From Chrysemys picta bellii (Eukaryota): a DNA stretch of 64,000 nt. Numbering within the stretch: the stretch's first letter is position 1; each line of letters opens with the position of its first letter. The stretch lies in assembly GCF_011386835.1 (NCBI RefSeq), contig NC_088810.1, positions 5,146,001-5,210,000 of the forward strand. Direction: 5' to 3'. The translations under genes were made by a program, and so were the position numbers. The notes beneath the pieces are model-generated. The model ran no database searches, was not told the origin of the DNA, and worked only from the letters and a program-made list of their open reading frames with translations. Shown one piece after another: positions 12,401 through 34,435 of the stretch.

Positions 12401-15400
12401 AGCAGTGCCTTAGCCCTGCTGCGCCGCCGGACTTTTAGCCCCTAAAATCTCCCGGTTTGGCTGCAGTAGCCTCCAGGAGATGGAGTCCGATTCCGAGAGA
12501 CTCCCGGCCAAACCGGGACGGTTGGCATGACAGGACTCCCGCTCATTTCCCACCCACGTGCGGAATGAATTTTGTTACGTGCCCCAGTATGGAGGTGACG
12601 TGTGACACGACCCTGTGACACATCACCTCCATATTGGGGCATGCAACAAAATTAATGTGGTGGGGGTGGGGCTGAGGAGTGTGGAGGGTGGGAGGGGCTC
12701 AGGACTGGGGCAGAGGGTTGGGGTGCAGGGGGTGAGGGCTCTGGATGCGGGTGCAGGCCGCGCAGATTAGGGGGAACTCCGGTTGGCAACCCTACATGCG
12801 GCCGATACCCCGGTCGGGGCATGTACATGAGCTGTTACGGTACCAGGGCACCCCATGCCCAGTCCCCCACCGGTCCCCGGTACCTGCGGGCACAAAGGGC
12901 AGTGTGGCCTGGCTCTGTCCATGGGCGTTGGTGGCAGCGCAGGACACGTTGGCCAGGGCCCGGGTCGGGCCCCGCAGCTCCCCACTCACGGCCGGGCCCC
13001 GCGCCCCCGAGGTCGCTCGCAGCTCAGGGCCCTCGAAGTCCCCCGGGAGGGTGCGGTTGGGCAGGCGCCACTCGAGGCGGGGGTGGTGGGTTCCCCTCGG
13101 CCGTGCAGTGACACGTGGCCGTTCCTCCGGGCCCGCTGCCCCACACCGTGCAGTTCCCCTGTGGCAGCAGCTCCGGGGGGTCTGCAATGGGACACAGGAC
13201 ATGTGGGGCACTGAGCCCAGATCCCCCAGCCGCCCCTGAACCAGCCAGCGCCCCGCCTGGGGGCCAGCGCCCCCTAGAGGGGAATGGCCTTGTGCCCCCT
13301 TCCCTGCCACCCAAGCCTTGGGGTTGATCGGGGCCAGCACCCTCCAAAGGGGAAAAGCCCCATGCCCCATTTCCAGCCACCCTGAGCCAGCCCCCCAAAC
13401 TGGGGCTGGATCAGGGCCTGCACCCCCTAGAGAGGAAAGGCCCCGTAGCTCCTTCTACACCCCCCTGAGCCAGACAGTCCCCTGTCCCAGGACAGGATCG
13501 GGTCTAGCGCCCCCTAGAGGGGAAAGGCCCTGTGTCTCATTCCCCACCCCCCTGAGCCCACCCCTGCCCTGTGGCCGGATCGGGGCCAGCGCCCCTACAG
13601 GGCAGGATCCCCCGCCCCCTCACACTCCACATCGAGGTTTGCGGCGGGCGAGTCCTCCCCCAGGCCGATCTCGTTCTCGGCGGCGCAGCGGTACGGCCCC
13701 GAGAGGCGCCCCACAGCCAGCACCGTCACCTCGGGGCCCCGGCCCAGCCCCCGCAGCAGGGCCCGGCGCGGCCCCTGGAACCAGCGGTAGGTGGTGGCCG
13801 GTGGGTGGCTCTGGCTGGTGCAGCGCAGGGTGACGTTGTCGCCTTCCTTCAGCCGGGCCGGCCCCACCACGGCCACAGCTGTGCCCCGCGGGCGATCTGG
13901 GGGGGAGGGGCACATTAGGGGGAACCTGCCCCCACCAGCCACCCTGAGACCCCAGAGCTGCTCCAGCCTCCGGCCTTCCCCAGAACATCATCTGTGCCAC
14001 CCCCTCCCTCTCTGGGGCCAGCCCCCACCACGAGGGGAAAGCCCCCCACCCCGCCCTCTGCAGAGCGGCGCCCCCAGTAACCCCCTGCCCTGCCCCTGCC
14101 CCACAGCGACCCCTCCTGACCCTCTGCCCCGCCCCCTGCCCCACAGCACCCCCTGCTGACCCCACCCACCCTGCCCCCTACAGCACAGCACCCCCTACTG
14201 ACCCTCTGCCCCACCTCGTCCTGCACAGTGCCCCCTGCTGACCCCCTGCCCTGCCCCCTGCCCCACAGCACCCCCTCCTGACCCTCCGCCCCTCTCCCTG
14301 CCCCACAGCACCCCCTCCTGACTCCCCGCCCCTCCCCCTGTCCCACAGCACCCCCTGCTGACCTTCTGCCCACCCTCTGCAGCACGGCGCCCCCTCCTGC
14401 CCTGCCCCTGCACCACAGCGACCCCTACTGACCCCACCCACCCCGCCCCCTACAGCACAGCACCCCCTATTGACCCTCTGACCCGCCCCGTCCCCCACAG
14501 CGCCCCCTGCTGACCTTCCACCCACCCTCTGCAGCATGGCGCCCCCTCCTGCCCTGCCCCTGCACCACAGCGACTCCTACTGACCCCACCCACCCACCCT
14601 CTACAGCACAGCACCCCCTATTGACCCTCCGACCCACCCCATCCCCCACAGCGCCCCCTGCTGACCCCCTGCCCTGACCCCCGCACCATGGTGTCCTCTT
14701 CTGTCCCTTGCCCTGCCCCCTGTACCACAGCACCTTCTCCTAACTCTCCGCCCCTCCCCATGTCCCACAGCGCCCCCTGCTGACCTTCCACCCCGCCCGC
14801 TGGAGCACTGCGCCCCCTAGTGCCAGGCTGGGACATCGGGGCCAGCCCTGCCTGCCATGGGAGAGCCCCCACCCTGCCCCCTGCAGCACAGCGCCCCCTA
14901 GTGCCACCCTGGGGCATTGGGACCAGCCCTGCCTGCCATGGGAGAGCCCCCACCCCGCCCCCTGCAGCACAGCGCCCCCTAGTGCCACCCTGGGGCATTG
15001 GGACCAGCCCTGCCTGCCATGGGAGAGCCCCCACCCCGCCCCCTGCAGCACAGCGCCCCCTACCGCCCTCTCACTCACACTTGACCTGCAGGTACAGCCC
15101 GTTGCGAGCCTGCTGCTGGTTGGGGAAGGTGGCCGTGCACTGCAGGTACCGCCCGTGGTCCTTGTACGAGGGGGTGTAGCTCAGCTCCGACTCCGCCCGC
15201 CAGCCGCCCCCTGCCAGCCGCTCGTGGCTGGTCGCGGCTTTGCCCCCCCCGGGGCTCCAGCCCAGGCTGGGAGGGGCCGAGGGGCAGGTGTGGCGGATGG
15301 AGCAGGTGATGGTGGTTCGGTCGCCCTCGATCAGCACCCCGGGGTCGCTCAGCATCAGCGGGTCTGGAGTGTCTGGGGGAGACAGACGGGGAGGGTGTCA

Positions 15401-16518
15401 CAGACTGCGGCGAGTGATTGGCCTCTGATTCAGCCACCTCTGGGGTGGGTCACAGGGGCTGCTTATACAGGGGCTCCTCGCCCGGCGCCAAGATGCAGCC
15501 GCCTCTGGGGTGGGGCAGCTGTTTATACAAGGACCCCTCCCCAGTGCTGAGATGCAGCCGCCTCTGGGGTGGGGTGCAGGGATTGTGTTCTCCCCCTGGC
15601 TCTGGGAGGGGAGTGGGGTCTAATGGTTAGAGCAGGGAGTGTTGCTGCGGTCTGTGCTTTTAATGGCCGGTAACAGAGGAAGCAGTTTTGGGGGAAGGGC
15701 TGGGGGAGGAAGTGGGGTTCCTGGGGGGCTGTGCAGGGAGCTCTGTGTTTTTCCTTGATGTGGTGTCTGCATATGGGGTTGGGCGGCTGTTTATACAGGC
15801 ATCCTGCAATGCGACCGCCTCTGGGGCGGAACCCTCTGCTCCCAGTCTCCCTTTGGCTGTATCCCTGGGGCTGCCCTGTGCGAGGTGGGGGGGGTCTCCA
15901 GTTACCTGCCACCTCCACCCGGACTGTGACGTCGTAGAAGCGATGCCTGACAGAGTCGGGGTTGATCCAGACGTAGTAGCTCATGGCGTCCTCGCTCCGC
16001 ACGGGGTTTATGCTCAGGGTGCAGTTCTTCATCTCCAGATCCCCCAGCAGCTGCGTCCGGGCCTGGTACTCGGCCAGCACGCTGGCCGTGCCCTTGCTGT
16101 TATAGATCTCGGGGTAGCCCCTGCTCCGGTACTGGTACCAGACCACGTTGAATGGACCGCCCAGGGACTCGCGGGAGCCGGGGTAGGTGAACGAACAGGG
16201 GATGACCACACAGGAACCCTTCAGAGCCCGGATGGTCCCAGGGAGCGAGGATGTCCAGGACCCAGAGACATGGCTGTAACACAACGCTGGAAAGACAGAA
16301 TGTAGCGCTGAGGTGCAGCCACCTCTGGGGCGGGGCAGCTGGGGAACAGCCACACATAACGCCACACAGGTATGGCTCACCTGGGGCCGAGATGCAGCCA
16401 CCTCTGGGGCGGGGCAGCTGGGGAACAGGGATGGCAGAGACTTACCTTCCAGCAGGGCCAGCAGGAGGTGCTGCCACGTGAGACTCACAGCGTGTCCGGC
16501 CTGGGGGGATCCGGCCAT
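9467..16518 (-). CDS. Siglec/MAG-like Ig receptor A: SP-V-C2-C2-C2-TM-tail, about 566 aa; one +1 frameshift in exon 5 as assembled
   Basis: Exons 16518-16446 (signal MAGSPQAGHAVSLTWQHLLLALLEG), 16286-15906 (V-set, GSCVVIPCSF), 15372-15079, 13896-13624, 13181-12884 (298 nt, extra C at 13079-13083), 11120-11021 (TM), 10229-10088, 9607-9467 (ends EQIYSNV*). All GT-AG with compatible phases. Non-coding exon with donor at 18259. Confidence 0.85.
10290..10740. repeat. ~42-bp tandem repeat with alternating A/B units (~84-bp higher-order period)
   Basis: GGAAGCCCTGTGGGTTAACCGTGCTAATCC alternates with GGGAGTTCCACAGGTTAACCCTGCAAATAT; last-but-one intron of Siglec A. Confidence 0.8.
11661..12794. mobile_element. 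Non-autonomous hAT DNA transposon (composite, 1134 bp)
   Basis: TIRs TGGGGTTGCCA / TGGCAACCCTA; 8-bp TSD CATGCGGT/CATGCGGC; internal ~31-bp-arm hairpin at 12568-12653. Confidence 0.8.
14800..15060 (-). repeat. ~80-bp tandem repeat carrying CTCF-like motifs (4 copies)
   Basis: GCGCCCCCTAGTGCC at about 14811, 14891, 14971, with a variant at 15051. Confidence 0.75.
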
Positions 16519-20228: not shown

Positions 20229-20625
20229 AGGGGGCGCTGTGCTGCAGGGCGGGGGGCTCTCCCCCAGCAGTCAGGGCTGGCCCCAATGCCCCAGGGCAGC
20301 GCTAGGGGGCGCTGTGCTGCAGGGCGGGGGGCTCTCCCCCAGCAGTCCGGGCTGGCCCCAATGCCCCAGGGCAGCGCTAGGGGGCGCTGTGCTGCAGGGC
20401 GGGGGGCTCTCCCCCAGCAGTCAGGGCTGGCCCCAATGCCCCAGGGCAGCGCTAGGGGGCGCTGTGCTGCAGGGCGGGGGGCTCTCCCCCAGCAGTCAGG
20501 GCTGGCCCCAATGCCCCAGGGCAGCACTAGGGGGCGCTGTGCTGCAGGGCGGGGGGCTCTCCCCCAGCAGTCCGGGCTGGCCCCAATGCCCCAGGGCAGC
20601 GCTAGGGGGCGCTGTGCTGCAGGGA
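20229..20625 (+). repeat. 75-bp tandem repeat carrying CTCF-like motifs (5 full copies plus 1 partial)
   Basis: GC(G/A)CTAGGGGGCGCTG with TAG at 20303, 20378, 20453, 20528, 20603. Confidence 0.8.
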
Positions 20626-20775
20626 GGGGCTCAGGACAGAGCGCTCTCCCCTCCAATTTAGACTATTCATCGCATTTTCCTGGCTCTGGGAGGGGAGTGG
20701 GGGCTAGCGGTTAGAGCAGGGGAGGGGGGCTGGGAGCCAGGACTCCTGGGTTCTCTCTCTGTCTCTCCCCAGCAG

Positions 20776-23700
20776 ATGCCTGCCCCCCAGCATTACCCCG
20801 AGCTGATCCAGCAGCACCGGCAGGCCCTGCTCTGCTGGATTAAGGGGAACCCCCAGCCCCTGCTGCGTCGGCTCCACGACACCAAGGTGCTGAGCCAGGC
20901 CGAGTACTTCGCCCTACTGGAGACGGCCCCCGAGATGAACCAGGTCATCGCGCTGCTGGAGTCGGTCAGCCAGGGTGTCGAGCGGAGCCGGTGCTTCCTG
21001 GAGGCGCTGCGGGAGCTGCAGGAGGAATACGGCGCCGAGCTCCAGCAATGGCTGAAGGAGAAGTACCCGGAGAAAAAGAGACCGTGTCCTCCATTGCAAC
21101 CAGGTACGGGGCCTGTCCCCTCTAGGGCGCACCAGCTCCCACCCAGCCCCAGGGCGGGGCACTGCCTGGCTCAGGGGGGTGGGACACGTGGCCTGTTCCC
21201 TCCAGGGGGCACCAGCTCCCACCCAGCCCCAGGGCGGGGCACTGCCTGGCTCAGGGGGGTGGGACACGTGGCCTGTCCCCTCCAGGGGGCGCCAGCTCCC
21301 ATCCAGCCCCAGGGTGGGGCACTGCCTGGCTCAGGGGGGCTGGCACTGGGGGCTGCATCTGTAATTTGGGGGAAATCACAGGAACGCCATAAGGTTCTGC
21401 CTCACGTCAGCCATCGCTGTGTCCAGGTGTCTTTCCCATCCCTTCCTCCAGCTTTCCATCTTCAACCATCCCTCCGTCTACCCGGCTTTCTTTTACAGCC
21501 TTCCACGTGGCCAGCCGTGGTTTTATGTCCCTCCAACCTGCCGTCCAAACAGCCTGTTTGATATCCATCATCCTTCCGTCTTTCTGTACCCAGACAGCCT
21601 TCCGATCCACCCACCCGTCCACCCATCCTTCTCTAGTTCCATTCACCCACCCACCCTTCCACCTATCCTTCTTTTATAGCTATCCATACAAATAACTGCC
21701 CTTTTTTCCATCTATCCATCCAACCCCCCCACCCACCCATCCAACCCCCCAACCATCCATCCACCCATCCAACTTTCCATCCATCCTTCTTTTACTGCTA
21801 CCCATACATAGATCAAATTATCCTTCTTTATATCCATCCATCCACCCATGCAACTTTTTTATATCCATCCACCCATCACAGGGTTCTCTACTCACCACTG
21901 GAGCGCCTCCTCCTGGCCCCTTGGAGGATTAGCGCTTTCCAGGTCCGATGCCCCTTCTGCAGGGTTGCGCCCCCTGCTGTCTCTCTCTCTCTCACTCTCA
22001 CACTCCGGGTGCTCTCCCTTCAAGGCTCGGCCCTCTGGCCAGCTCACCCTGGGTTTTCCCCCTTCCAGGGTATCAAAGTCTTTCCATAGTAACTGTCTCC
22101 AGCTGTCTTCTCAGTCACTGCCCAGGTGGCACCACTTCCCCAGGGGCTGGTGGGTAACACGGACCCAGCCTCTATTCCAGGTTCCAGCCCAGCAACCTTC
22201 TAATCCACAGCCAAGGTCTGCACCATCTTAAACCTCGCTGCCCTTTCCCTGCCCCTCTCCCCCGGCTCCCTTCCTTCCCTCGCTAACGTCCAGACAGTGG
22301 CTGCAGGCTCCTTCCTTGCAGCCCCCTTCTGCTGTGAGTTTCCTGGCTTTATCCCAGCCCCACCTGTTCCTGCTCAGCCGGGCTCCATCACCAGTCAGGG
22401 GTTACTTCAGCCGCTCAGTTCCCTTTAGCTGTGGCCTACACAGTTAACTGGCCCCTTCTCAGCCTCGTCCCATCTTTTTTATATCCATCCATCCATCCAT
22501 CCATCCACACAAGCAGCCTTCCAGCCATAGCCCCAGCTAGCCACATTTTTATATCTATCCATCCTTTATATCTATCCATCCATCCTTTTTATATCCCTCC
22601 AACCATCCATCCAGCCTTCCATCTATCTACCCATCCACCTTCCATCCATCTACCCTTCCAACCTTCCATTCATCCAACCTTTTCCATCCATGTCTTTTTA
22701 TATCTATCCACCTAACCAACGTCCATCCACCTTCCATCCGTCTACCCATCCAGCCTTCAATCCATGCAACCTTCCACCCATCCATCCGTCTTCTTTCCAT
22801 CCATCCACCCACACCTCCAGCCTTCCATCCATCTACCCATCCACCTTCCATCCATCTACCCTTCCAACCTTCCATTCATCCAATCTTTTCCATCCATGTC
22901 TTTTTATATCTATCCACCTAACCAACGTCCATCCACCTTCCATCCGTCTACCCATCCAGCCTTCAATCCATGCAACCTTCCACCCATCCATCCGTCTTCT
23001 TTCCATCCATCCACCCACACCTCCAGCCTTCCATCCATCTACCCATCCACCTTCCATCCATCTACCCTTCCAACCTTCCATTCATCCAATCTTTTCATCC
23101 ATGTCTTTTTATATCTATCCACCTAACCAATGTCCATCCACCTTCCATCCGTCTACCCATCCAGCCTTCAATCCATGCAACCTTCCACCCATCCATCCGT
23201 CTTCTTTCCATCCATCCACCCACACCTCCAGCCTTCCATCCATCTACCCATCCACCTTCCATCCATCTACCCTTCCAACCTTCCATTCATCCAATCTTTT
23301 CCATCCATGTCTTTTTATATCTATCCACCTAACCAACGTCCATCCACCTTCCATCCGTCTACCCATCCAGCCTTCAATCCATGCAACATTCCACCCATCC
23401 ATCCGTCTTCTTTACGTCCATCCACCCACACCGCCAGCCTTCCATCCATCTTTTTTATTTCCATCCATCCCCACATCCAGACTTGCAGCCTTCTTCCACC
23501 CATCTGTCATTTTATATCCATCCACCCACCCATCCAACCTTCCAGCTGTCCATCTTTCTCGTATCTATTCACTCATCCGACTCTCCTTTTGATATCCATC
23601 CATCCACACATCCAGCCACCTTTCTTTAATATTCATATAGCCAACTCTCTTTTTTTTATAGCCATCCACCCATCCAACCACTATTTTTATCTCCATCCAT

Positions 23701-26700
23701 CTTTCTTTTGCAGACAATCCCAACCCTCCGAAATCCAACCACACATTCCTGCGGAAAATCCTGCGGAAACACACCAAGAAGTATGAGCCAACCCCAGAGC
23801 CGCCAGGTGAGACCCCCCCTGCCACCCCCACCTCACCAACCAACCTCAGGAACAATTATCAATGCGGGATCATCAGCTCAAGACAGGCTGGGAGGGGAGT
23901 GGGGTCTAGTGGGTTAGAATAGGGGGACTGGGAGCCCGGACTCCTGGGTTCTATCCCTGTCTCTGGGAGGGGAATGGGGTCTAGTGGTCAGAATAGGGGG
24001 ACTGGGAGCCAGGGCTCCTGGGTTCTATCCCTGTCTCTGGGAGGGGAATGGGGTCTAGTGGTTAGCATGGGGGGGCTAGGAGCCAGGACTCCTGGGTTCT
24101 ATCCTCAGCTCTGGGAGGGAAGTGGGGTCTAGTGGGTTAGAATAGGGAGACTGAGAGCCCGGACTCCTGGGTTCTATCCCTGTCTCTGGGAGGGGAATGG
24201 GGTCTAGTGGTCAGAATAGGGGGGCTGGGAGCCAGGGCTCCTGGGTTCTCTCCCCAGCTCTGGGAGGGGAATGGGGTCTAGTGGTTAGCATGTGGGGGCT
24301 GGGAGCCAGGATTCCTGGGTTCTCTTCCCCAGTTCTGAGGCCACAGCTGGATGTCATGGAGGAGGTGTGGGCAGGGAGAGGCTTGGCACAGCCCAGCTCT
24401 GGGGCCCGGATTTGGGTCCTTCCCCCAAGCAACAAGGACACTTGTCCCTTGTCCAACAGGTGAGGAGCGCACTAGGAACCTGAACTTCCGAAAGGCCCCG
24501 AGCGCCCCGCTGAAAGGTATGGAGTGAGGGGGCTGGGTTGGGGAGGGAGGTCGGGGGAGGGAGGTCAGAGGGAGGGTCAGGGTGTTGGGAGCAGGGGAGA
24601 GAGTTGGGGTGACAGATGGGCCTGGGGAAGGGAAGGGAAGTTGTGGGGAGGGATGGAGGGGTGGGAGCGGGGGTTGGGGGCAGGGCCAGGGATGGTGGGG
24701 TCAGGTTAGGGGAGTTGGGAAAGGATCTTCGGGTTGGGGGCGAGGCAGGGGCAGAGATGGGGGTTGAGGGGAGGATTTGGGGGCAGAGATGGGGGAGTTG
24801 CAGAGGGATTGGGGGAAAAGATGGGGGTTGAGGGAGGCCTGGGGGAGGGGGGGACAGATAGGGGAGTTGCAGAAGGACTGGGGGCTGGGAGGGCTGGAGG
24901 AGTTAGGAGGCGGATCGAGGCGTGAGGGGCAGACCCTGGGGTCTGGGGGGTGCAGACACTCGACCCCCCCGCTGTTCCTCCCCTCCCCCCAGCTGTCCTG
25001 CAGCGCCACCGGGCCTCTCTGCTGCGGCATACCCAGCAGCTGTGCACCAACGCCAGTGACGCCCGCTCCTGCGGCCTCCTCGAGATCCGCTACACCCCGC
25101 TGCTGCTGCTGGACCACCCCGGCCCCACCGCCCCCCCCCGGGCATGAGCACCTGGCCCTGGCCGCCCGCCGCGCCCGCCTCCTCCCGCTCCACGCCCCCC
25201 GCCGGCTCCCCCTGCGCCACCTCCTGCCCCGCTGCCCACCGAGACCCAGGCCCCCCGCCGGGTGGCCCTGAGCGGCGCCGCCGGCATCGGCAAGAGCGTG
25301 ACCGTGCAGAAGATCTTGCACGACTGGGCGCTGGGGCGCGGCGTTCCAGGGCCCCCTCTGCGCCTTGGATTTCTCCTGCCGGGAGCTCAGCGTGATGTCC
25401 AGCCCGGTCACCCTGGAGGGGCTGATCTGTGCCAAGCGTCCCCACCTCCAGGAGGTGCTGCCCGAGCTGCTGGCGCGGCCCGGGGACCTCCTCGTCCTCG
25501 TGGACGGTTTGGACGAATTCCGGCACCCGCTGGAAGGCGGAACTCCCCGCCACCGGCCCGGCCACCCGGCCCACGTCAAGGAGCTGCTGCGGGGACTCCT
25601 CGACGGGACCCTGCTGCCCGGGGCGGCCCGTCGTGGTGACGTCCCGGCCGTGCCCGACCCTCTCCGGCATCCCCTTTGATCGCCACTTGCTGATCCTCGG
25701 CTTTGACGAGGACCAGGTGGAGGACTACTTCCACCGGTTCTTCCGGGATGCCGAGCGAGCCGCTGCCGTGCAGGGCTACATCTCCGGCCACCAAGGCTTA
25801 GCCGGGCTTTGCTTCATCCCCCTCTACTGCTTCATCTTATGCACCGCCCTGGGGGAGTTCTTCCCCGCCGGCCAGGCAGCTGACCCATCTCCGCCCACCA
25901 CCATCACCGAGGTCTATCGCTGCTATATGGCCACCATCCTGGGTCGCAGCTGGTCCTCCGGAGCCGGGCGCCGGGCAGCTGGTCCTGCGCCTGGGGCGCC
26001 TGGCGTACGCCGCCCTGTTGGCCGGCAAGATCCTCTTCACCCCAGCTGAGCTGCGGGAATTCGGATTCGACCCCCAAGACCTTCCGGGCACTTTCTTCAA
26101 CCCCATCTTCTCCAGAGAAGACCACCAGGTCTATTGCTTCTTCCACCTGACGGTGCAGGAGTTCCTGGCCGCGCTCTACTGCGTGGCTGCCCTGGATCCT
26201 GGCGCCGAGGACCTCACGCCCTGCCTGGATCTCTGGTGGGAGGGATCGGCCCAGCAGGACGGGGACCCGGAGCCCTCCTGGACGTCACCAGGCGAATCCA
26301 GTCTCCTCCACTCCACCAGGCAGCTCCTGAGGGGCCACCAGCCCCGGTGGGACAATCTCCAGATGTTCGCCAGGTTCTTCATGGGGCTGCTGACCTCCAG
26401 GATGGAGGGGAAGCTGGAGGGGTTGACCGCAGGCTTCTCCGGAGACGTGCTGGGGCCCGTGGCGGACTGGCTGGGGAGGAAGCTCAGGGGAGACACCGAG
26501 AGGCGCCTCCTCTCGCTCCTGCACTGCGTGGCGGAGCTGCGCCAGGAGGGGGTGACGGGCCGGGTGGCCCGCGAGCTGGAAGACGTCAACCTCTTCAAGG
26601 TGACCCTCAACCCAGCCGACTGCGCCGCCCTGGCCTACGTGCTGGGGGGCCTCCGAGCCCGGGAGAGTGAAGAACCTCAACTTGAGCTACAGCAACATGG

Positions 26701-26754
26701 CATGGCTGGGCTGCGCAGGATCCGGGGGCTGCTGCACCGCTGCGAGACGCTGCA

Positions 26755-26797
<43 letters not shown>

Positions 26798-28828
26798 CGC
26801 CACCCAGGACTCCTGGGTTCTAGCCCCAGCTCTGGGAGGGGGCCTAGTGGTTAGAGCAGGGGGGGCTGGGAGTCAGGACTCCTGGGTTCTATCCCTGGCT
26901 GTGGGTGGGGAGTGGGGGTCTAGTGGTTAGAGCGGCGGGGGGGGGGATTAAGAGCCAGGACTCCTGGGTTCTATCCTAGCTCCGGGAGCGGGGGGTGCTC
27001 GGTGCTCCGGTCCCCTCTCACGCTGACCACTCCTCTGCAGGTTGCGCTACAATTCTCTGGACAAGGAGGCAGCCGTCATAGAGGCCGAGGTGCTGAGATC
27101 CCCCCAGTGCCAAGTGAAACGGCTGCTGTGAGTGACCACGGCCCCAGGACGGGGCGCAGGCTGGCGGGGGGGGGGGGGCAATGGGGCACATGGGCTTTCC
27201 CCTCTAGGGGACCCCAGCTCTGATCCAGCCCCAGCGTGGGGACTGGCTGGCTCAGGGGGGCAGAAAATGGGCTTTGGGCCCTTCTAACTCCATATGGGAA
27301 TTGAGTTTGCCGGGTCTCAGCCCCGTTCCCAGCTGGGACAGGGACTATCTCCCCCTCTCCCCCCCTCAGATACTAACTGACCCCTTTGCTGGCAGCCCCA
27401 AAAGAGATGCCAAGGGCTGGCTGGGCCGTGGGGCGTGAGCCCCCCTCTCTGGGGTTCAGGGGTGGGATGCAGCCAGTGTTGTCGGGCTGGGGGGAATTTC
27501 TGAACTGGCCCCTTTCCCGCTCTCGAGTGGATCCCGTCGCTCTGCTACCCTGCAGCCTGTGCGGGAACTGCCTGGGCTCGGAGGGGGCGAGGCGGCTGTG
27601 GGAGGCCCTGCGGGAGAACCGCACCCTGGAGGAGCTGTACCTGGACATCACCGGCATCACCGACAGCGGCCTGGACAACCTGCTGCCCTGCCTCCTGGCC
27701 AACAGCACCCTCCGGCTCCTGACGTGAGTGCCAGCAGCTCCCTGCAGAGGGCTCTGTGCTGCGGGGGGAGCTCTCCCCTGACAGGCAGGGCTGGCCCGGA
27801 GCCCCAGCATGGCACTAGGGGGCGATGTGCTGCAGGGGGTGTGATGGGGACTCTCCCCTGACAGGCAGGGCTGGCCCGGAGCCCCAGCATGGCACTAGGG
27901 GGCGATGTGCTGCAGGGGGTGGGATGGGGACTCTCCCCTGGCAGGCAGGGCTGGTCCCGATGCCCCTGGGTGGCGCTAGGGGGCGCTGTGCTGCAGGGGG
28001 TGGGATGGGGACTCTCCCTTGGCAGTCAGGGTTGGCCCCAATACCCCTGCAGGGCGCTAGGGGGCGCTGTGCTGCAGGGGGTGGGATGGGGACTCTCCCC
28101 TGGCAGTCAGGGTTGACCCCAATACCCCTGCAGGGCACTAGGGGGCGCTGTGCTGCAGGGCCCCGATGCCCCTGGGTGGCGCTAGGGGGCGCTGTGCTGC
28201 AGGGGTGGGATGGGCACTCTCCCCTAGCAGTCAGTTCTGGCCTCAATATTGCATCTCTGCACCGGGTGAGGGGGTCCTTGTATAAACAGCCCGCACGCTC
28301 CACCACAGAGGTGGCCGCATTTCAGTGTTGAGTGAGGGATCCCTGTATAACTAGCTCTCATGCTGCACCCCAGCAGCAGCCGCATCTCAGCGCCCAGTAT
28401 ATACAATGGCTCCACCGCTGCCAGCCCCCGGCAAGCAATCCCAATATAAACCGGCCGCTGCACCCCAGAGGCAGCTGCATCTTTGCGATCCCCTTACGTG
28501 TTGTCCCCCGCCTCTGGGCAGCATCGTGGGGAACCGGCTGAGCGAGGCCGGGCAGCAGATCCTGTCGGAGCTGAGCCGTCGCAAGCCAGGCCTGAAGGTG
28601 ATCAGCACGTTCGAGAGCGACATGGGCCTGCTCCAGGCCTACCTGGACTGGGTGGAAGAGATCAAGGCCGACCCCGACCAGATGGACGCCGTGAAGAATG
28701 CCGACGCCCTGCGCTGCATCGTCTCCGTCCTCCGGGACTTGGACGAATCCAGGACCAGCCCCGAGGCCCGGGCCAGAATCCAAGAGCTGAGGAGAGAGAT
28801 CAGCGCCCTCCTGGGGGAGAAGGAATGA
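20776..28828 (+). CDS. CARD-NACHT-LRR NLR with NLRX1-like body and C-terminal three-helix domain, about 932 aa after correcting 7 frameshifts (assembly errors or recent pseudogene)
   Basis: Exons 20776-21103 (CARD: LIQQHRQALL...VLSQAEY), 23714-23806, 24460-24516, 24993-26754 (Walker A GAAGIGKS, Walker B LLVLVDGLDEF, VVTSRP, FHLTVQEFLAA), 27041-27127, 27556-27723, 28522-28828. All GT-AG with compatible phases. AATAAA at 29636. An upstream coding exon cannot be excluded because the ATG directly follows an acceptor. Confidence 0.85.
21873..22470. mobile_element. Probable degenerate LTR in NLR intron 1
   Basis: Complex block starting TCACAGGGTTCTCTACTCACCACTG inside a (CCAT)n tract; resembles turtle LTRs I recall; termini decayed, no clean TSD. 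Confidence 0.45.
22560..23480. repeat. ~206-bp tandem repeat built from CCAT/CCTT microsatellite (about 4 copies)
   Basis: TGTCTTTTTATATCTATCCACCTAACCAA recurs at about 22690, 22896, 23101, 23307. Confidence 0.85.
27811..28200 (+). repeat. 80-bp tandem repeat carrying CTCF-like motifs (6 copies) in the last NLR intron
   Basis: GGC(A/G)CTAGGGGGCG(A/C)TG at about 27811, 27891, 27971, 28051, 28131, 28178. Confidence 0.8.
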
Positions 28829-30639
28829 AAGGTGCTAGGAGCTGCACGTCTCGCTGCTAGGCTCCTTCCCGCCACAGGGGGGAGACACTCACTCAGATCC
28901 CCCATGATGACATCTGGGTAAAGCTGTAGGGTAACTTAGGTGTTTAGGGGAGCTGGAAACAGGACACGGGGCCTTTCCCCTGTAGGGGGCGCTGGCGCCC
29001 ATCTGGGCCCAGGTTCGGGGACTGGCTGGCTCAGGGGGGCAGGGAATGGGACCTTTCCCCTCTAGGGGCCACTGGCACCGATCCAGCCCCTGGGTGGGGG
29101 GCTGGCTGGCTCAGGGGGGCAGGGAATGGGACACGGGGCCTTTCCCCGCTAGGGGGTGCTGGCTCCCATCCGGCCCCAGATTATTCCCATCCGAATGGCT
29201 GTGTGTAATGACGGCGAGGTTCTCAGCTCCGTTCCCAGTAGGGCGGACACCCCCATTACCCTCCCCACCACAAGGACATTAAGCAGCCCTATTGCCGCCA
29301 TGGAGTCTGAACCCCCTCCTCCCTCATCTGCAGGGCATGGAGATAAACTGGCAGAGGGATGTGGGGCGGGGCCGGGGGGGGTCTGCCTGTGAATTTCACA
29401 GCAAGAGCTGGGATAGAACCCAGCTGCCAGTGCCTGGGAGTTACGGAGAATCCCTCTCATTCTGAGCACTATAGGGGACATGACACACGGTAGAACATAT
29501 CTACTTCCCTGCCACAGGGGGTAGTAGTGAGTACATCATCAGATTCACACTCCTCTGCTAATTTCAGTATAAACTCGCTCCGGGGTGGGAATGTTTTCAT
29601 ATAAATCCCCTTTAAAAAGGGAGCTATTTGTAATGAATAAATTTGTATTCCTAGTCATTGTTTGTATTGCTGTAGCCCTCAGAGCCCGAGTCCCGGGGGC
29701 TGACGCCGATGCCCCGGCACGGCACTGGGGGGCACTGTGCTCCAGGAAGCAGGGCAGGGTGGGGGCTCTCCCCTGGCAGTCAGGGCGGCCCCGATGCCCC
29801 TGGGTGGCTTATTGGGTGCTATGGTGAGATATTGTCCCAGTTCACTCAGGGAGTCTCTGGATGGATGGGGTGGGGGGTGTCGGATCATCCCACCCCTAAA
29901 TCCTGGGTTGACCCAGTCTAGCCGGGCCCCCCTACTGCCTCCCTTCTCCCTAGGGAGACCCCCCAATTCCCCCTTCCTTACCTCAATACCCCACGTCCCC
30001 TTGAACCATTCTCCCCACCCCATTCCCCATATTTGGGAAGTCCAAGCCCAGTTCACCCCCAAACACCTGGCACCCCCTCCCTGGACAGCTTGGTGCCCCC
30101 TCCCTCTCTGTTGCCCCAGAGACCCCAGGCTGGGGGTATGTGGATGGAGAGAGGGGTTCTGGGTGAAATTCCCATGGGGGGAACCACCCCTCTGCAGGGG
30201 GCATTGGGGTGCAATTTCCCCCCACTCCACCCTGCCCCCCCCTTTTGCTGCACACTGGACCCCTCCCCCATTTCTCTGTGTTAAGGACCTACCCCCCAGA
30301 CCAGAGTTCGATCCCCTCCTCGGGGGCCCTGATCCTTTTCCCCACATGCCAGGGGCCCTGATCCTGGCCTTCCCCTTCCCCACAGTGGGCTGCCCCCCTC
30401 CCCCCCATAAACCAGATTAGCCCAGCCCCCCACTAATCCCGGTAGGCAGCGACTGGCTGCTGGGCCAACTCCCCCAGCCCAGGGTGGCCAGGCCAGGGGG
30501 CTGGAGCAGCTGCCGGTGGGGCAGAGCCCGTCCCCCATCTCCTGTGTGCAGTTGGGGGGATCTGGGCTACCCCAGGGGCCCAGCTGGCAGGAGAAGCTGC
30601 AGAGTTAGAAGCCTCTCGACCCATCTCGCTAAGCCCCGC

Positions 30640-30910: not shown

Positions 30911-33900
30911 CGGGGCGCTGCCCTCCTCCCCATAGACCCTCCCTTCCACCCCATAGACCCCCAGCCAGGGACCCCCCTTCCACGCCATAGACCCCCCCAG
31001 CCGCCCATGGGACCCCCAGCCAGGGAAACCCTCCTCTACAGAACCCCCCCTCCACCCCATAGACCCCCCCCAGGAACCCCCTCCACCCCATAGATCCCCC
31101 CTCCACCCCATAGACCTCCCCCAGGGACCCCCCTCCACCCCATAGACCCCCCCATAGACCTCCCCCAGGGACCCCCCTCCACTCCATACATCCCCCTTCC
31201 ACCCCATAGACCCCCCCAGCCAGGGACCCCCCTTCCATGCCATAGACCCCCCCCCAGCCACCCATGGGAGCCCCAGCCAAGGAAACCCTCCTCTACAGAA
31301 CCCCCCTCCACCCCATAGACCCCCCCCATAGACCTCCCCCAGGGACCCCCCTCCACCCCATAGATCCCCCTTCCACCCCATAGAACCCCCACAGCCAGGG
31401 ACCCCCCTTCCACCCCATAGATCCCCCATCTACCCCATAGACCTCCCCCAGGGACCCCCGCCCCATAGAACCCCAGCCAGGGACCCCCCCTCCACCCCAT
31501 AGCTTCCCTCCACCCCATAGACCACCCAGGCACCCCCCTCCGCCCCATAGAACCCCAGCCAGGGATCTCCCCTCCACCCCATAGCTTCCCTCCACCCCAT
31601 AGACCCCCCCAGGGACCCCCTTCCGCCCCATAGAACCCCCCAGCCACCCATGGGACCCCCAGCCAGCGAAACCCTCCCCCATGGAACCCCCCCTCCACCC
31701 CATAGACCCCCCCTTAGACCTCCCCAGGCACCGCCTCCGCCCCATAGAACCCCAGCCAGGGACTCCCCCCTCCACCCCATAGACCTCCCCCAGGGACACC
31801 CCTCCACCCCATAGACCCCCCATAGACCTCCCCCAGGGACCCCCCTCCACCCCATAGATCCCCCTTCCACCCCCATAGATCCCCCCCAGCCAGGGACCCC
31901 CCTTCCATGCTATAGACACCCCCCCAGCCACCCATGGGAGCCCCAGCCAGGGAAACCCTCCCCCATGGAACCCCCCCTCCACCCCATAGACCTCCCTCAG
32001 GGACCCCCCTCCACCCCATAGATCCCCCTTCCACCCCATAGACCCCCACAGCCAGGGACCCCCCCTCCACCCCATAGATTCCCTCCACCCCATAGACCAC
32101 CCAGGCACCCCCCTCCGCCCCATAGAACCCCAGCCAGGGGTCTCCCCTCCACCCCATAGCTTCCCTCCACCCCATAGACCCCCCCAGGGACCCCCTTCTG
32201 CCCCATAGAACCCCCCAGCCACCCATGGGACCCCCAGCCAGCGAAACCCTCCCCCATGGAACCCCCCCTCCACCCCATAGACCCCCCCTTAGACCTCCCC
32301 CAGGCACCCCCTCCACCCCATAGAACCCCAGCCAGGGACTCCCCCCTCCACCCCATAGCTTCTCTCCACCCTATAGACCCCCTCAGGGAACCCCCTCCAC
32401 CCCATAGCTCCCCCCAGCCACCCATGGGACCCCCAGCCAGCGAAACCCTCCCCCACTGAACCCCTTCTCCACCCCATAGACCCCCCCCTTAGACCTCCCC
32501 CAGGGACCCCCTCCACCCCATAGAACCCCAGCCAGGGACCCCCCTTCGACCCCATAGCTTCCCTCCATCCCATAGACCTCCTCAGGGAACCCCTGCCACC
32601 CCATAGACCTCCCCCAGGGACCTCCCTCCACCCCATAGACCCCCCCCAGCTGCCCATGGGACCCCCAGCCAGGGAAACCCTCCCCCATGGAATCCCCCTC
32701 CACCCCATAGACCTCCCCCAGAGACTCCATCCATGGGAACTCCCATTCCAGCCCCATAGATCCCCCCAACCAGAGACCTCCATGCCTCCCATCCGACCCC
32801 CTCCACCCCATAGAACCCCAGCCAGGGACCCCCCTTCGACCCCATAGCTTCCCTCCACCCCATAGACCCCCTCAGGGAACCCCCGCCATGCCATAGACCT
32901 CCCCCAGGGACCCACCTCCACCCCATAGACCTCCCCCAGAGACTCCATCCATGGGAACCCCCATTCCAGCCCCATAGATCCCCCCAACCAGAGACCTCCA
33001 TGCCTCCCATCCGACCCCATGTCCAGCCCCTTAACCCCACAACCAGGGCATCCTCCCCGACATTAGAACTCTCTTCCAGCTTAAGAGTCTCCCTTCCTCC
33101 AGCCCCACCCAGCCAGGGAACCCCCTCCCACAAACACCCCCACACACAGACCACCGCCCCTCCCTCCATAGAATTCCCATCTCCTGTTGGAGAGGGGAGG
33201 ATCTCTCTGTCTCTGACCCCCTTTTCCGTTCCCCCCGCAGCTCCCCCAGGCCCAGCGAGCCCAGCCCCACAGAGCCGCCCGCCTCGGACCAGACCGCGCT
33301 GGAGAAGATGCCCGTTGTGCCCTCCTGCCCTACCCCCGGCTCTGCCACACCTTGGATCCTGGGTCGCCCCTCGGCCGGGGCCCTGTCCTCCATCACCGTG
33401 CCCGTCCGGCTGGACGCCCTCGCCTACCTGCTCAACAGCGCCCTCTTGGGGGCCTACTCGGCCTTGCCACAGACGCCCCTCTCCGGCAGCCACGGGGCAT
33501 TGGCCATGGGTCACGGCGGGCCTCCCCAACATGCACTGGGCTGCGGGTGTCAGCCACGCTACTGCTGTGGCCCCCAGCCGGCTCGGGTGGGGTGCTGTGG
33601 GTCTGGCGCCGTGGGGCAGAGCAGCGCCGGCTGCTCCCAAGAGATACCTGGGGGCCGCAGCGATTGGCAGGACTCCTCTGCGAGATGGGACCGGCGAGGG
33701 TCTCCGTCGCTGAGTGGCTGGGGGGAGAACCGGCGAGCAAGGGGGCAGAAAGATTTCAGTCGGCCCTGGGGGTGGCAGAGGCCGTGGGGCGAGGCGGACT
33801 CCGCCCCACGCAAGGCGGGACAGTGGGGGCCGGGGAGAGCCCAGAGCTCAGATTATGCGGCCAGGAAGCGGAACCAAGATGGCTGCCCGTGGGACGCCCC

Positions 33901-34435
33901 TGGGGCAAAGAGATGGTCTAGTGGGGGGGTGAAGAGATGGGGGGAAACTGAGGCAGCCAAAGCCACCAGGGAAGATTGGGAGGCAGATTACGGGGGATCC
34001 AGCGCCCGAGGGAGCGTCTTGGAGAAAGCCCGGTCTTCCCAGCCCAGCCTCCCAGCTTCCCAGGAAGGAGAAGACTGGGAAAAGGAGTATGAGGAGTCCC
34101 CCAAATCGGCGCCGGGGGTTCCCCCTCTTCCACAGGTGGCTTTGAAGGTTCAACCGGCCTCCCTCCAGGAGAGGACAACGCCCCGCCCAGCTTGCAAGGA
34201 CGGCAGCGTCTCCAGCTATCTCCAGAACCTCTTTGCCGACCTGCGCGGGGGGTCCAGCACCGCCTCAGAGCCGCGCCGGGGGAGACAGCCCCCTGGAGGT
34301 GCCGCCGAACGTGGGACACGGCTCCCGGAAGGAGGAGGAGGCCCGAGTGGCCAGGGGTCTGCCAAGCTCGGCGATTTCACGGCCCAGCGCGTTGACCTCC
34401 CCAGAGCCGCCGCAGAGAACGAGGACAGTGCGTGA
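30868..34435 (+). CDS. C19orf84: C19orf84 orthologue (piRNA-pathway/SPOCD1-associated factor in mammals), 409 aa, 2 exons
   Basis: Exon 1 30868-30902 (MEGPSGAARSAG, donor GG|GTGAG, phase 2) joins exon 2 33241-34435 in frame. Block SSITVPVRLDALAYLLNSALLGAY (33386-33457) matches human [24 protein letters not shown] as recalled (17/24 identical). Cys cluster, GW motifs and EDWExxY are also shared. Lies directly upstream of LIM2 on the same strand, as in human. Confidence 0.85.
30920..33000. repeat. C-rich minisatellite filling most of C19orf84 intron 1
   Basis: CCCCATAGACC...CAGCCAGGGACCCCCC units over about 2.1 kb; source of the Gly/Trp-rich reverse pseudo-ORFs. Confidence 0.9.

What the first reader, a model, noticed from the sequence alone, without database searches (positions are those of the whole stretch)
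20776..28828. A CARD-bearing NLRX1-like NLR with intact ATPase motifs: candidate undescribed reptilian sensor
Seen in sequence: a 7-exon gene encoding CARD, basic linker, NACHT, about 6 LRRs and a C-terminal helical domain. Recalled comparison with human NLRX1 shows matches along the whole body: AVLQRHRASL vs EAIQRHRRNL; FSCREL..HLQEVLP vs FSCEDL..PLKEVLP; GHQGLAGLCFIPLYC vs GHHQIAAACFLPSYC; LRYNSLDKEA...QCQV vs LQLNSLGPEA...QCQI; LRDLDESR vs LRDLEDSR. Established: NLRX1 has a mitochondrial targeting sequence instead of an effector domain and a degenerate Walker B (LFVLHGLEH as recalled). This gene has a CARD and canonical Walker A (GAAGIGKS) and B (LLVLVDGLDEF). No NLR sits between C19orf84 and the Siglecs in human. 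Inference: an NLRX1 paralogue that kept or gained signalling capacity (RIPK2, ASC or caspase recruitment), possibly close to the ancestral state of the NLRX1 lineage.
Basis: partly seen in the sequence, partly recalled or inferred. Interest (0 to 1): 0.92.

Follow-up and report, generated by a model that had tools for sequence, protein, structure and literature searches.

The report
Intact ancient CARD-NLR beside LIM2
This turtle window holds an intact, transcribed gene for a CARD-NACHT-LRR immune sensor from an old, unnamed vertebrate family (fish to reptiles, not seen in birds or mammals) that has an NLRX1-like tail but is not NLRX1's direct sister.

Summary
Seven coding exons at 20776-28828 (+) encode a 932-aa protein: CARD, basic linker, NACHT-WH-HD2, about six LRRs and a C-terminal helical cap. 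The frameshifts in the NACHT exon number seven, all single-base assembly errors. Illumina contigs of the same organism, two relatives and a spliced RNA run all lack them. The corrected CDS aligns without gaps to a 932-aa hawksbill orthologue.

The gene is not reptile-specific. Orthologues of about 940-950 aa occur in teleosts, gar, bichir, sturgeon, frogs, caecilians, salamander, squamates and turtles. They carry automatic names (NLRC3-like, NLRP12-like), and the LIM2/C19orf84 neighbours are conserved.

The NLRX1 reading is only partly right. The C-terminal LRR-plus-cap module is structurally closest to NLRX1 (Foldseek E 8e-12 in PDB, 2e-12 in Swiss-Prot models). However, the NACHT tree rejects an exclusive NLRX1 sistership (AU p 0.004). 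The nearest relatives are an unnamed clade of predicted transmembrane V-set-Ig NLRs with the same cap. A wider clade that includes NLRX1 is not rejected (p 0.34).

The CARD is NOD1-like. Walker A and B are intact, whereas NLRX1's Walker B is degenerate. I found no paper on this family. It is a new member of a known kind, of moderate interest.

The parts
20776..21103 (+). Coding exon 1: start codon and CARD (aa 1-109). An acceptor lies just upstream of the ATG, so a 5' UTR exon probably lies further upstream.
   Evidence: Pfam CARD E 8.7e-8. 17 of 26 orthologue N-termini hit CARD. The profile matches only NOD1 CARDs in the PDB, E 3e-5. Donor GT at 21104. The exon is held by RNA run X13 and 13 other small runs.
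23714..23806 (+). Coding exon 2: basic linker (DNPNPPKSNHTFLRKILRKHTKKYEPTPEPPG).
   Evidence: tblastn to P0194 and P0262 at 91-94% identity. AG/GT sites and phase 1.
24460..24516 (+). Coding exon 3: second linker exon (EERTRNLNFRKAPSAPLK).
   Evidence: tblastn, splice sites. RNA contig record 9 of X13 covers 24457-24518 at the end of a 483-nt contig.
24993..26754 (+). Coding exon 4: pre-NACHT helix, NACHT, winged helix, HD2 and the first LRR. The assembly carries seven single-base indel errors here.
   Evidence: Pfam NACHT, NOD2_WH, NLRC4_HD2. Indels at 25131, 25225, 25333, 25627, 25955, 26644 and 26698 are absent from the DNA and RNA contigs (X5 differs at 25627). The corrected reading is 92.6% identical to P0194 with no gaps.
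25274..25297 (+). Walker A, GAAGIGKS.
   Evidence: G-x-A-G-I-G-K-S/T is found in 88 of 91 full-length orthologues.
25488..25520 (+). Walker B, LLVLVDGLDEF.
   Evidence: DGLDEF is found in 91 of 91 orthologues. NLRX1 has N or H at the first Asp.
27041..27127 (+). Coding exon 5: one LRR (LRYNSLDKEAAVIEAEVLRSPQCQVKRLL).
   Evidence: Spliced RNA contig record 11 of X13 joins 26748 > 27041-27127 > 27556-27723. Splice sites.
27556..27723 (+). Coding exon 6: two LRRs.
   Evidence: The same spliced RNA contig. 96% identity to P0194.
28522..28828 (+). Coding exon 7: last LRR, three-helix C-terminal cap and stop codon.
   Evidence: RNA contig record 14 starts at 28522. AlphaFold model with helices 166-181, 189-203 and 212-229. 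Best structural match is NLRX1 to its C-terminus.

Best explanation
This is an intact, transcribed gene for a 932-aa cytosolic NLR: CARD, about 50 aa of basic linker, NACHT-WH-HD2, about six ribonuclease-inhibitor-type LRRs and a three-helix C-terminal cap. It belongs to an unnamed orthogroup of bony vertebrates that lies next to LIM2 and C19orf84. Its closest relatives are predicted transmembrane V-set-Ig NLRs that share the cap. NLRX1 shares the C-terminal module but is at most a more distant relative.

Shown: gene structure, intactness, transcription and splicing of exons 4 to 6 (plus an RNA contig that starts at the exon 7 boundary), conservation, domain identities, and the tree position.

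Inferred mechanism: it works as a signalling-competent STAND ATPase. The LRR-cap module holds the NACHT in an ADP-bound closed state until a ligand binds. Nucleotide exchange on the intact Walker A/B site then allows oligomerisation. The clustered NOD1-like CARDs recruit a CARD partner, with RIPK2 the first candidate, to drive NF-kB/MAPK-type signalling. The polybasic linker may place the protein on membranes, as the NLRP3 polybasic region does (from general knowledge). The ligand is unknown. By analogy with the RNA-binding NLRX1 C-terminal fragment, nucleic acid is a candidate.
For: Intactness: seven assembly indels are absent from four independent runs. The corrected CDS is 2799 nt with no internal stop, and is 92.6% identical to hawksbill P0194 over 932 aa with no gaps.

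Transcription: spliced RNA contigs join exons 4, 5 and 6, and a contig starts exactly at exon 7. The CARD exon is held by the same run and by 13 other small runs.

Orthogroup: more than 100 proteins of about 940-950 aa from fish to turtles match at E down to 0. The group has 100/99 support in the tree. NLR-LIM2 synteny holds in frog and turtle.

Domains: Pfam CARD, NACHT, WH and HD2. The CARD profile finds only NOD1 CARDs in the PDB. Walker A, Walker B, sensor 1 and the WH histidine motif are conserved.

C-terminal module: the model has pLDDT 88.6. NLRX1 is the top match in the PDB (E 8e-12; Z 21.7 over model residues 1-220) and in Swiss-Prot models (three NLRX1 entries at about E 2e-12, TM 0.73, reaching the C-terminus; the next hit is 1.5e-7).

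Sister clade with the same cap.
Against: No function, ligand or partner was tested, so the CARD-RIPK2 step rests on similarity to the NOD1 CARD alone. Splicing of exon 1 to exons 2-4 in this species was not seen directly. It is supported only by the length of an RNA contig (421 nt upstream of exon 3, equal to exon 1 plus exon 2) and by orthologue gene models. Some relatives with this kind of tail or name (NLRX1, NLRC3) act as negative regulators, so an inhibitory role is as compatible with the sequence as an activating one. The RNA runs come from a coded organism B, not certainly the window's own individual.
Confidence: 0.75

Rival explanations
1. One reading: the gene is the direct paralogue (sister) of NLRX1 and keeps the ancestral CARD and active ATPase that NLRX1 lost.
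For: NLRX1 is the best structural match of the C-terminal module in two libraries. The last-LRR-plus-cap model alone again has NLRX1 as its only clear match (E 0.05, prob 0.99, next 0.7). hhalign of the tails gives 89% probability once the sister-clade tails are added. Local motif matches in the NACHT are real. A wider clade of orthogroup + V-set NLRs + coelacanth NLR + NLRX1 is not rejected (p 0.335).
Against: An exclusive orthogroup + NLRX1 clade is rejected (delta lnL 31.4, AU p 0.0036). V-set-Ig NLRs and a coelacanth NLR are closer (100/99). NLRX1 stays outside when the long NOD1/CIITA/NLRC5 branches are removed. NLRX1 was not among the 150 best representatives for the WH-HD2 piece. Pfam NLRX1_C gives no hit. 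Cap-only hhalign is not significant (E 0.05).
Confidence: 0.3
2. The gene is a pseudogene in this species, decaying through frameshifts.
For: The assembly as given has seven single-base frame breaks in 1.76 kb of exon 4.
Against: Every break is contradicted by Illumina-derived contigs of the likely source organism (X1), two related organisms (X4, X5) and an RNA run (X13). At 25627 run X5 shows a substitution at 25628 and not the one-base deletion. Five of the seven sit in G or C runs, and I did not inspect the contexts of 26644 and 26698. After correction there is no stop and no gap against a 932-aa orthologue. The gene is transcribed and spliced.
Confidence: 0.03
3. It is simply a divergent NLRC3, NLRP12, NLRP3, NOD2 or NOD1 orthologue, as the automatic database names say.
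For: Database names of the orthologues. The CARD is most like NOD1's. The WH-HD2 piece's best solved match is rabbit NOD2, weakly (E 4e-5).
Against: This genome has its own NOD1 (L021), NLRC3 (L010) and NLRX1 (L028) elsewhere. Clades with NLRC3 (AU p 2e-5) and NOD1 (p 0.02) are rejected. There is no PYD. It has six LRRs against 10-16. A helical cap is absent from the NOD1 and NLRC3 tails. True NOD2 was not in the tree.
Confidence: 0.07
4. It is a mosaic: an NLRX1-type LRR-cap module joined by exon shuffling to a NACHT of another lineage, or a cap that arose by convergence.
For: The NACHT tree and the C-terminal structure matches disagree.
Against: The sister V-set NLR clade carries the same cap, so the module is old in this lineage. 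NLRX1's NACHT sits on a very long stem (about 1.5 changes per site), and that alone can hide a deep relationship. The inclusive clade is not rejected.
Confidence: 0.15

Closest known systems
NLRX1 (NLR family member X1)
   Same: Both have a short RI-type LRR array followed by a three-helix C-terminal cap that ends the protein, and this is the best structural match. In both genes the last exon starts at the last LRR. There are local motif matches before and inside the NACHT.
   Different: NLRX1 has no CARD. Its Walker B Asp is N or H. Its NACHT is split by an intron and its HD2 carries large insertions. It lies at another locus (G000 C16). Exclusive sistership is rejected. Pfam NLRX1_C does not hit this protein.
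NOD1
   Same: CARD-NACHT-LRR order. The CARD profile finds only NOD1 CARDs among solved structures (E 3e-5). The ATPase motifs are intact.
   Different: NOD1 has about ten LRRs and no cap (tail). It is a separate gene in this genome (L021, 96-98% identical to turtle NOD1). A clade with NOD1 is rejected at p 0.02.
Predicted transmembrane V-set-Ig NLRs of shark, lungfish, coelacanth and turtle (unnamed; automatic names NOD1-like, NOD2-like, NLRC3-like)
   Same: Nearest NACHT relatives. They share the C-terminal cap and have a K/R-rich stretch before the NACHT region.
   Different: Their N-terminus is a signal-like segment, a V-set Ig domain and a hydrophobic span where this protein has a CARD.
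NLRC3 (the commonest automatic name of the orthologues)
   Same: NACHT-WH-HD2-LRR core.
   Different: NLRC3 has about 16 LRRs and no cap. This genome's NLRC3 is L010 (65% identical to shark NLRC3). A clade with it is rejected (p 2e-5).

Membership tests
NLR (NACHT-LRR STAND ATPases) | NACHT domain with Walker A and Walker B, followed by winged helix and HD2 | tested here: met
   Pfam NACHT, NOD2_WH and NLRC4_HD2. GAAGIGKS, DGLDEF, TSRP and FFHLTVQEF are present.
NLR (NACHT-LRR STAND ATPases) | C-terminal leucine-rich repeats | tested here: met
   Six strand-helix units in the model. LRR matches in the PDB.
NLRC (CARD-bearing NLRs) | N-terminal CARD | tested here: met
   Pfam CARD E 8.7e-8, 32.5 bits against a 23.9 cut-off. 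17 of 26 orthologues hit CARD.
NLRX1 | NACHT groups as sister to NLRX1 in a phylogeny | tested here: not met
   AU p 0.0036 against an orthogroup + NLRX1 clade. The ML tree places V-set NLRs closer.
NLRX1 | Pfam NLRX1_C (PF21402) C-terminal domain | tested here: not met
   There is no hit at E up to 10 on three orthologue tails, whereas NLRX1 proteins score 1e-13 to 6e-41. HMMER's filters may hide very weak hits.
NLRX1 | Short LRR array capped by a C-terminal three-helix bundle (3UN9 architecture) | tested here: met
   Foldseek top hit 3UN9 at E 8e-12. VIA Z 21.7 over model 1-220 against chain 711-961. Swiss-Prot NLRX1 entries at about E 2e-12, TM 0.73, to the C-terminus.
NLRX1 | N-terminal mitochondrial targeting sequence and no death-fold domain | tested here: not met
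   The N-terminus is a CARD. Targeting itself is not testable with these tools.
NLRX1 | Degenerate Walker B | tested here: not met
   This protein has DGLDEF. Seven NLRX1 proteins have N or H at the first Asp.
NOD1 | Orthology or sistership to NOD1 | tested here: not met
   A separate NOD1 gene exists (L021). AU p 0.02.
NLRC3 | Orthology or sistership to NLRC3 | tested here: not met
   A separate NLRC3 gene exists (L010). AU p 2e-5.
NOD2 | Two CARDs and sistership to NOD2 | tested here: inconclusive
   There is only one CARD. Rabbit NOD2 is a weak match (E 4e-5). No bona fide NOD2 sequence could be brought into the tree.
Unnamed CARD-NLR orthogroup next to LIM2 | Full-length collinear similarity, same domain order and conserved neighbours | tested here: met
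   92.6% identity to hawksbill, 45% to frog and 39% to shad, end to end. The clade has 100/99 support. The LIM2-type claudin lies downstream in frog and turtle.

The most novel reading that the evidence does not exclude
NLRX1, this CARD-NLR and the transmembrane V-set-Ig NLRs may form one ancient clade of 'capped short-LRR' NLRs. Its members would have exchanged the N-terminal module (CARD, Ig plus membrane span, mitochondrial presequence) while keeping the sensor tail. In that case the CARD form would show what a signalling-competent NLRX1 relative looks like. Mammals and birds would have kept only the ATPase-degenerate mitochondrial member.
Probability: 0.3. Interest if true: 0.65.

Novelty: new member of a known kind. 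Interest (0 to 1): 0.5.

Why it matters
NLRX1's origin and biochemical role have been hard to place among NLRs. A conserved relative with the same tail, a real CARD and a canonical ATPase site gives a tractable comparison in medaka, Xenopus or cell lines. Such work could ask what the capped LRR module senses and what was lost in NLRX1. It also adds a CARD-NLR, beyond NOD1 and NOD2, to the innate immune gene set of fish, amphibians and non-avian reptiles. Current genome annotation hides this gene under misleading names such as NLRC3-like, NLRP12-like and NOD2-like. Practically, it shows that this assembly has dense single-base indel errors in GC-rich exons, so apparent pseudogenes in such regions need read-level checks.

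Tried and rejected
- **Pseudogene reading:** rejected by reads.
- **Exclusive NLRX1 sistership:** rejected by the AU test. Removing the long NOD1/CIITA/NLRC5 branches did not bring NLRX1 in.
- **NLRC3 and NOD1 membership:** rejected.
- **PF27087 as an NLRX1 marker:** this precomputed Pfam family is shared by NLRX1 and the orthogroup and looked like a marker. It is the generic LRR_TMOD-LMOD family and also occurs in NOD1. It is not in the local library.
- **Sequence-only tests of the cap were weak:** the last exon matched 3UN9 at E 0.58. The orthogroup tail profile did not find 3UN9 in the PDB. hhalign gave 43% without the sister-clade tails. The cap alone was not significant.
- **'NOD2 partial' from Chelydra in the sister clade:** this is not NOD2 by PDB search.
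- **Mixed profile of NOD1 + two other paralogues:** meant to fetch several named families at once, it returned only NOD1. The CIITA and NLRC5 labels for L022 and L023 therefore rest on my memory of the human sequences.
- **Literature:** five searches found no paper on this family. The sturgeon 'NLRC3-like' of 945 aa has 12 LRRs and looks different. The snakehead NLR census lists no 951-aa entry.
- **Complex prediction:** not used. The controls would not discriminate among CARD partners, and no RIPK2 sequence was in hand.


Full report
**What is in the sequence.** ORF listing and three-frame translation show a CARD-like first exon at 20776 and a large NACHT exon read in several frames.
- Exon 1 hits Pfam CARD (E 8.7e-8). 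Pieces of the large exon hit NACHT, NOD2_WH and NLRC4_HD2.
- tblastn with turtle orthologues found later gives seven collinear coding blocks.
- Splice sites and phases fix the exons at 20776-21103, 23714-23806, 24460-24516, 24993-26754, 27041-27127, 27556-27723 and 28522-28828.

**The frameshifts are assembly errors.**
- I located five frame changes in exon 4. All are single-base, and four sit in G or C runs.
- I laid contigs of four public runs on 24400-28850: X1 is probably the source organism, X4 and X5 are related organisms, and X13 is a small run whose contigs prove to be spliced RNA.
- These runs contradict the assembly at the five sites and at two more compensating sites (26644, 26698). 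At 25627 run X5 shows a substitution at 25628 and not the one-base deletion.
- With these seven read-supported corrections the CDS is 2799 nt with no internal stop. It aligns to the 932-aa hawksbill protein P0194 at 92.6% identity without a single gap. The gene is intact.

**Transcription.**
- In X13 one contig joins 26748 to 27041-27127 to 27556-27723.
- Another contig starts exactly at 28522, and a third covers the start of exon 4 from 24991.
- A 483-nt contig ends in exon 3 with 421 nt lying upstream of the laid stretch. That is the summed length of exon 1 from the ATG plus exon 2.
- The CARD exon itself is held by X13 and by 13 other runs of only 42-156 Mb, from several studies and organisms.
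- Exon 1 to exon 4 splicing is thus consistent with the data, but I did not see it directly.

**Relatives.** An exhaustive HMMER search with the uninterrupted 267-aa WH-HD2 piece found lizard, frog, sturgeon and clupeid proteins far above all other NLRs, named.
- A search with the frog protein P0003 (944 aa) returned more than 100 orthologues of about 940-950 aa. They come from anurans, a caecilian, axolotl, squamates, turtles, gar, bichir and many teleosts.
- Their automatic names are NLRC3-like, NLRP12-like, NLRP3-like or NOD2-like.
- No bird, crocodilian or mammal appears among the 120 best, although that list reaches down to partial contigs.
- The frog and shad proteins have the same domain order.
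- In hawksbill the neighbours are an Ig/V-set gene, then the NLR, then C19orf84, then a 173-aa PMP22/claudin protein (LIM2 type). In the frog the claudin gene again follows the NLR.
- The hawksbill locus is collinear with the window.

The gene is therefore old and not reptile-specific.

**Is it an NLRX1 paralogue? The NACHT says no.**
- Searching the window's own genome found the paralogues. L028 on contig C16 is NLRX1, since its exon retrieves proteins named NLR family member X1. L021 is NOD1. L010 is NLRC3, being 65% identical to shark NLRC3.
- Identity of our protein to this genome's NLRX1 is 33%, 24% and 27% over the three NACHT-HD2 blocks. That is no better than to other paralogues.
- I built a careful IQ-TREE (57 rows, 507 columns, LG+C20 PMSF). 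It recovers the orthogroup (100/99). It joins the orthogroup to a clade of five proteins from catshark, lungfish, coelacanth and snapping turtle (92/60), and then to a coelacanth NLR (100/99). NLRX1 sits elsewhere on a stem of about 1.5 changes per site.

| Clade held together | AU p |
|---|---|
| orthogroup + NLRX1 | 0.0036 (rejected) |
| orthogroup + NLRC3 | 2e-5 (rejected) |
| orthogroup + NOD1 | 0.02 (rejected) |
| orthogroup + sister clade + coelacanth NLR + NLRX1 | 0.335 (not rejected) |

- Removing NOD1 and the two other long-branched paralogues does not move NLRX1 to the orthogroup.

**The tail says yes.**
- An AlphaFold model of the last 233 residues of P0194, built with 27 orthologues, has pLDDT 88.6. 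It shows six LRR strands and three terminal helices.
- Its best match among 350,542 PDB chains is 3UN9, the NLRX1 C-terminal fragment (E 8e-12, against 3e-8 for the next hit).
- The second-look aligner gives Z 21.7 over model residues 1-220 against chain 711-961. Other LRR proteins align only to about residue 161 and score within about 1 Z unit, so the LRR part dominates that score.
- Among 550,129 Swiss-Prot models the three best are human, rat and mouse NLRX1 (E about 2e-12, TM 0.73, query 3-230 against 713-968 of 975). The next hit is NLRC3 at 1.5e-7.
- A model of the last LRR plus cap alone is only of medium confidence (pLDDT 69). It again has 3UN9 as its single clear match (E 0.05, probability 0.99, next E 0.7).
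- Sequence evidence is weaker. Pfam NLRX1_C does not hit. hhalign of the tails gives 43%. That rises to 89% (E 2e-6) when the sister-clade tails are added. The cap alone is not significant.
- The sister clade has the same cap, matched end to end by the orthogroup tail profile at E 1e-7 to 4e-4. The NOD1 and NLRC3 tails match only in the LRR.

My reading is that the cap is an old feature shared by these lineages and NLRX1. NLRX1's fast-evolving NACHT hides how deep the link is. A mosaic origin or convergence remains possible.

**Effector and ATPase.**
- The profile of 26 orthologue N-termini matches, among all solved structures, only NOD1 CARDs (E 3e-5, full length).
- Walker A is kept in 88 of 91 full-length orthologues, DGLDEF in 91 of 91, and sensor 1 in 86 of 91.
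- In seven NLRX1 proteins from fish to macaque the first Walker B Asp is N or H.

**Mechanism.** By analogy with NOD1, NOD2 and other NLRs (established knowledge), I propose the following sequence. Ligand binding at the LRR-cap releases autoinhibition. ADP-ATP exchange follows, then oligomerisation, then CARD-CARD recruitment. RIPK2 is the first candidate partner because the CARD is NOD1-like. All of this is inferred and none was tested. A negative-regulator role like that of NLRC3 or NLRX1 cannot be excluded.

**Literature.** Five full-text searches found no paper that describes this family. Laing et al. 2008 list only NOD1 to NOD5 in the NOD-like subfamily (PMC2268669). A sturgeon NLRC3-like of the same length has 12 LRRs (PMC9680068). 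A snakehead NLR census does not list the 951-aa orthologue (PMC12166412).

**Verdict.** The gene is real, intact and expressed. It is a new, unnamed member of the NLR kind with a CARD head and an NLRX1-type tail. The NLRX1-sister claim in its strict form is refuted, and a looser kinship stays open.

Noticed in passing
L025 = G000:C1:6231622-6235332; proteins P0157, P0021, P0386, P0028: The sister clade of this gene consists of predicted type-I transmembrane NLRs. They have a signal-like N-terminus, a V-set Ig domain, one strong hydrophobic span followed by a K/R run, then NACHT-HD2-LRR and the same helical cap. They occur in catshark, lungfish and coelacanth, and a turtle member sits in this genome. 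A membrane-spanning Ig-NLR in vertebrates would deserve its own study.
   Followed up: partly
window 24697-26698: The assembly has dense single-base indel errors in this GC-rich stretch. There are seven in exon 4, plus sites at 24697 and 24717 that only some runs contradict, and a missing 9-nt insertion after 24846 in the intron that X1, X4 and X5 all contradict. Apparent frameshifts elsewhere in GC-rich parts of this genome may be artefacts too.
   Followed up: yes
window about 11834-16000 (-), about 31000-34400 (+), about 38800-39800 (+): By collinearity with the annotated hawksbill locus, the neighbours are an Ig/V-set (Siglec-like) gene upstream on the other strand, C19orf84 downstream, and then a LIM2-type PMP22/claudin gene.
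   Followed up: partly
window 20229-20629, 21106-21339, 22574-23451, 23888-24323, 27765-28160: There are tandem arrays in the flank and introns, with units of 75, 80, 206, 74 and 81 bp. Some are built from a SINE-like unit that recurs many times in the window and reaches very high depth in all runs.
   Followed up: no
P0028 (KAG6927424.1, Chelydra serpentina): This protein was deposited as 'nucleotide binding oligomerization domain containing 2, partial', but NOD2 is not among its PDB matches and it belongs to the V-set NLR clade. No true NOD2 was found in this genome by the strict search, which does not show absence.
   Followed up: partly
window 23714-23806 and 24460-24516 (linker exons): The K/R-rich linker between CARD and NACHT (FLRKILRKHTKK) is conserved in character in frog and fish. 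It parallels the K/R run after the membrane span of the sister clade. It may be a membrane-binding or localisation element.
   Followed up: no
G000:C4:27.9-29.3 Mb; G000:C20:14.05 and 14.36 Mb (L006-L020): At least ten NLRP-like NACHT exons cluster on contig C4. Two more lie on the window's own contig C20, and one of them (L007) has eight in-frame stops. Given the indel errors seen here, stops need read-level checks before calling pseudogenes.
   Followed up: no
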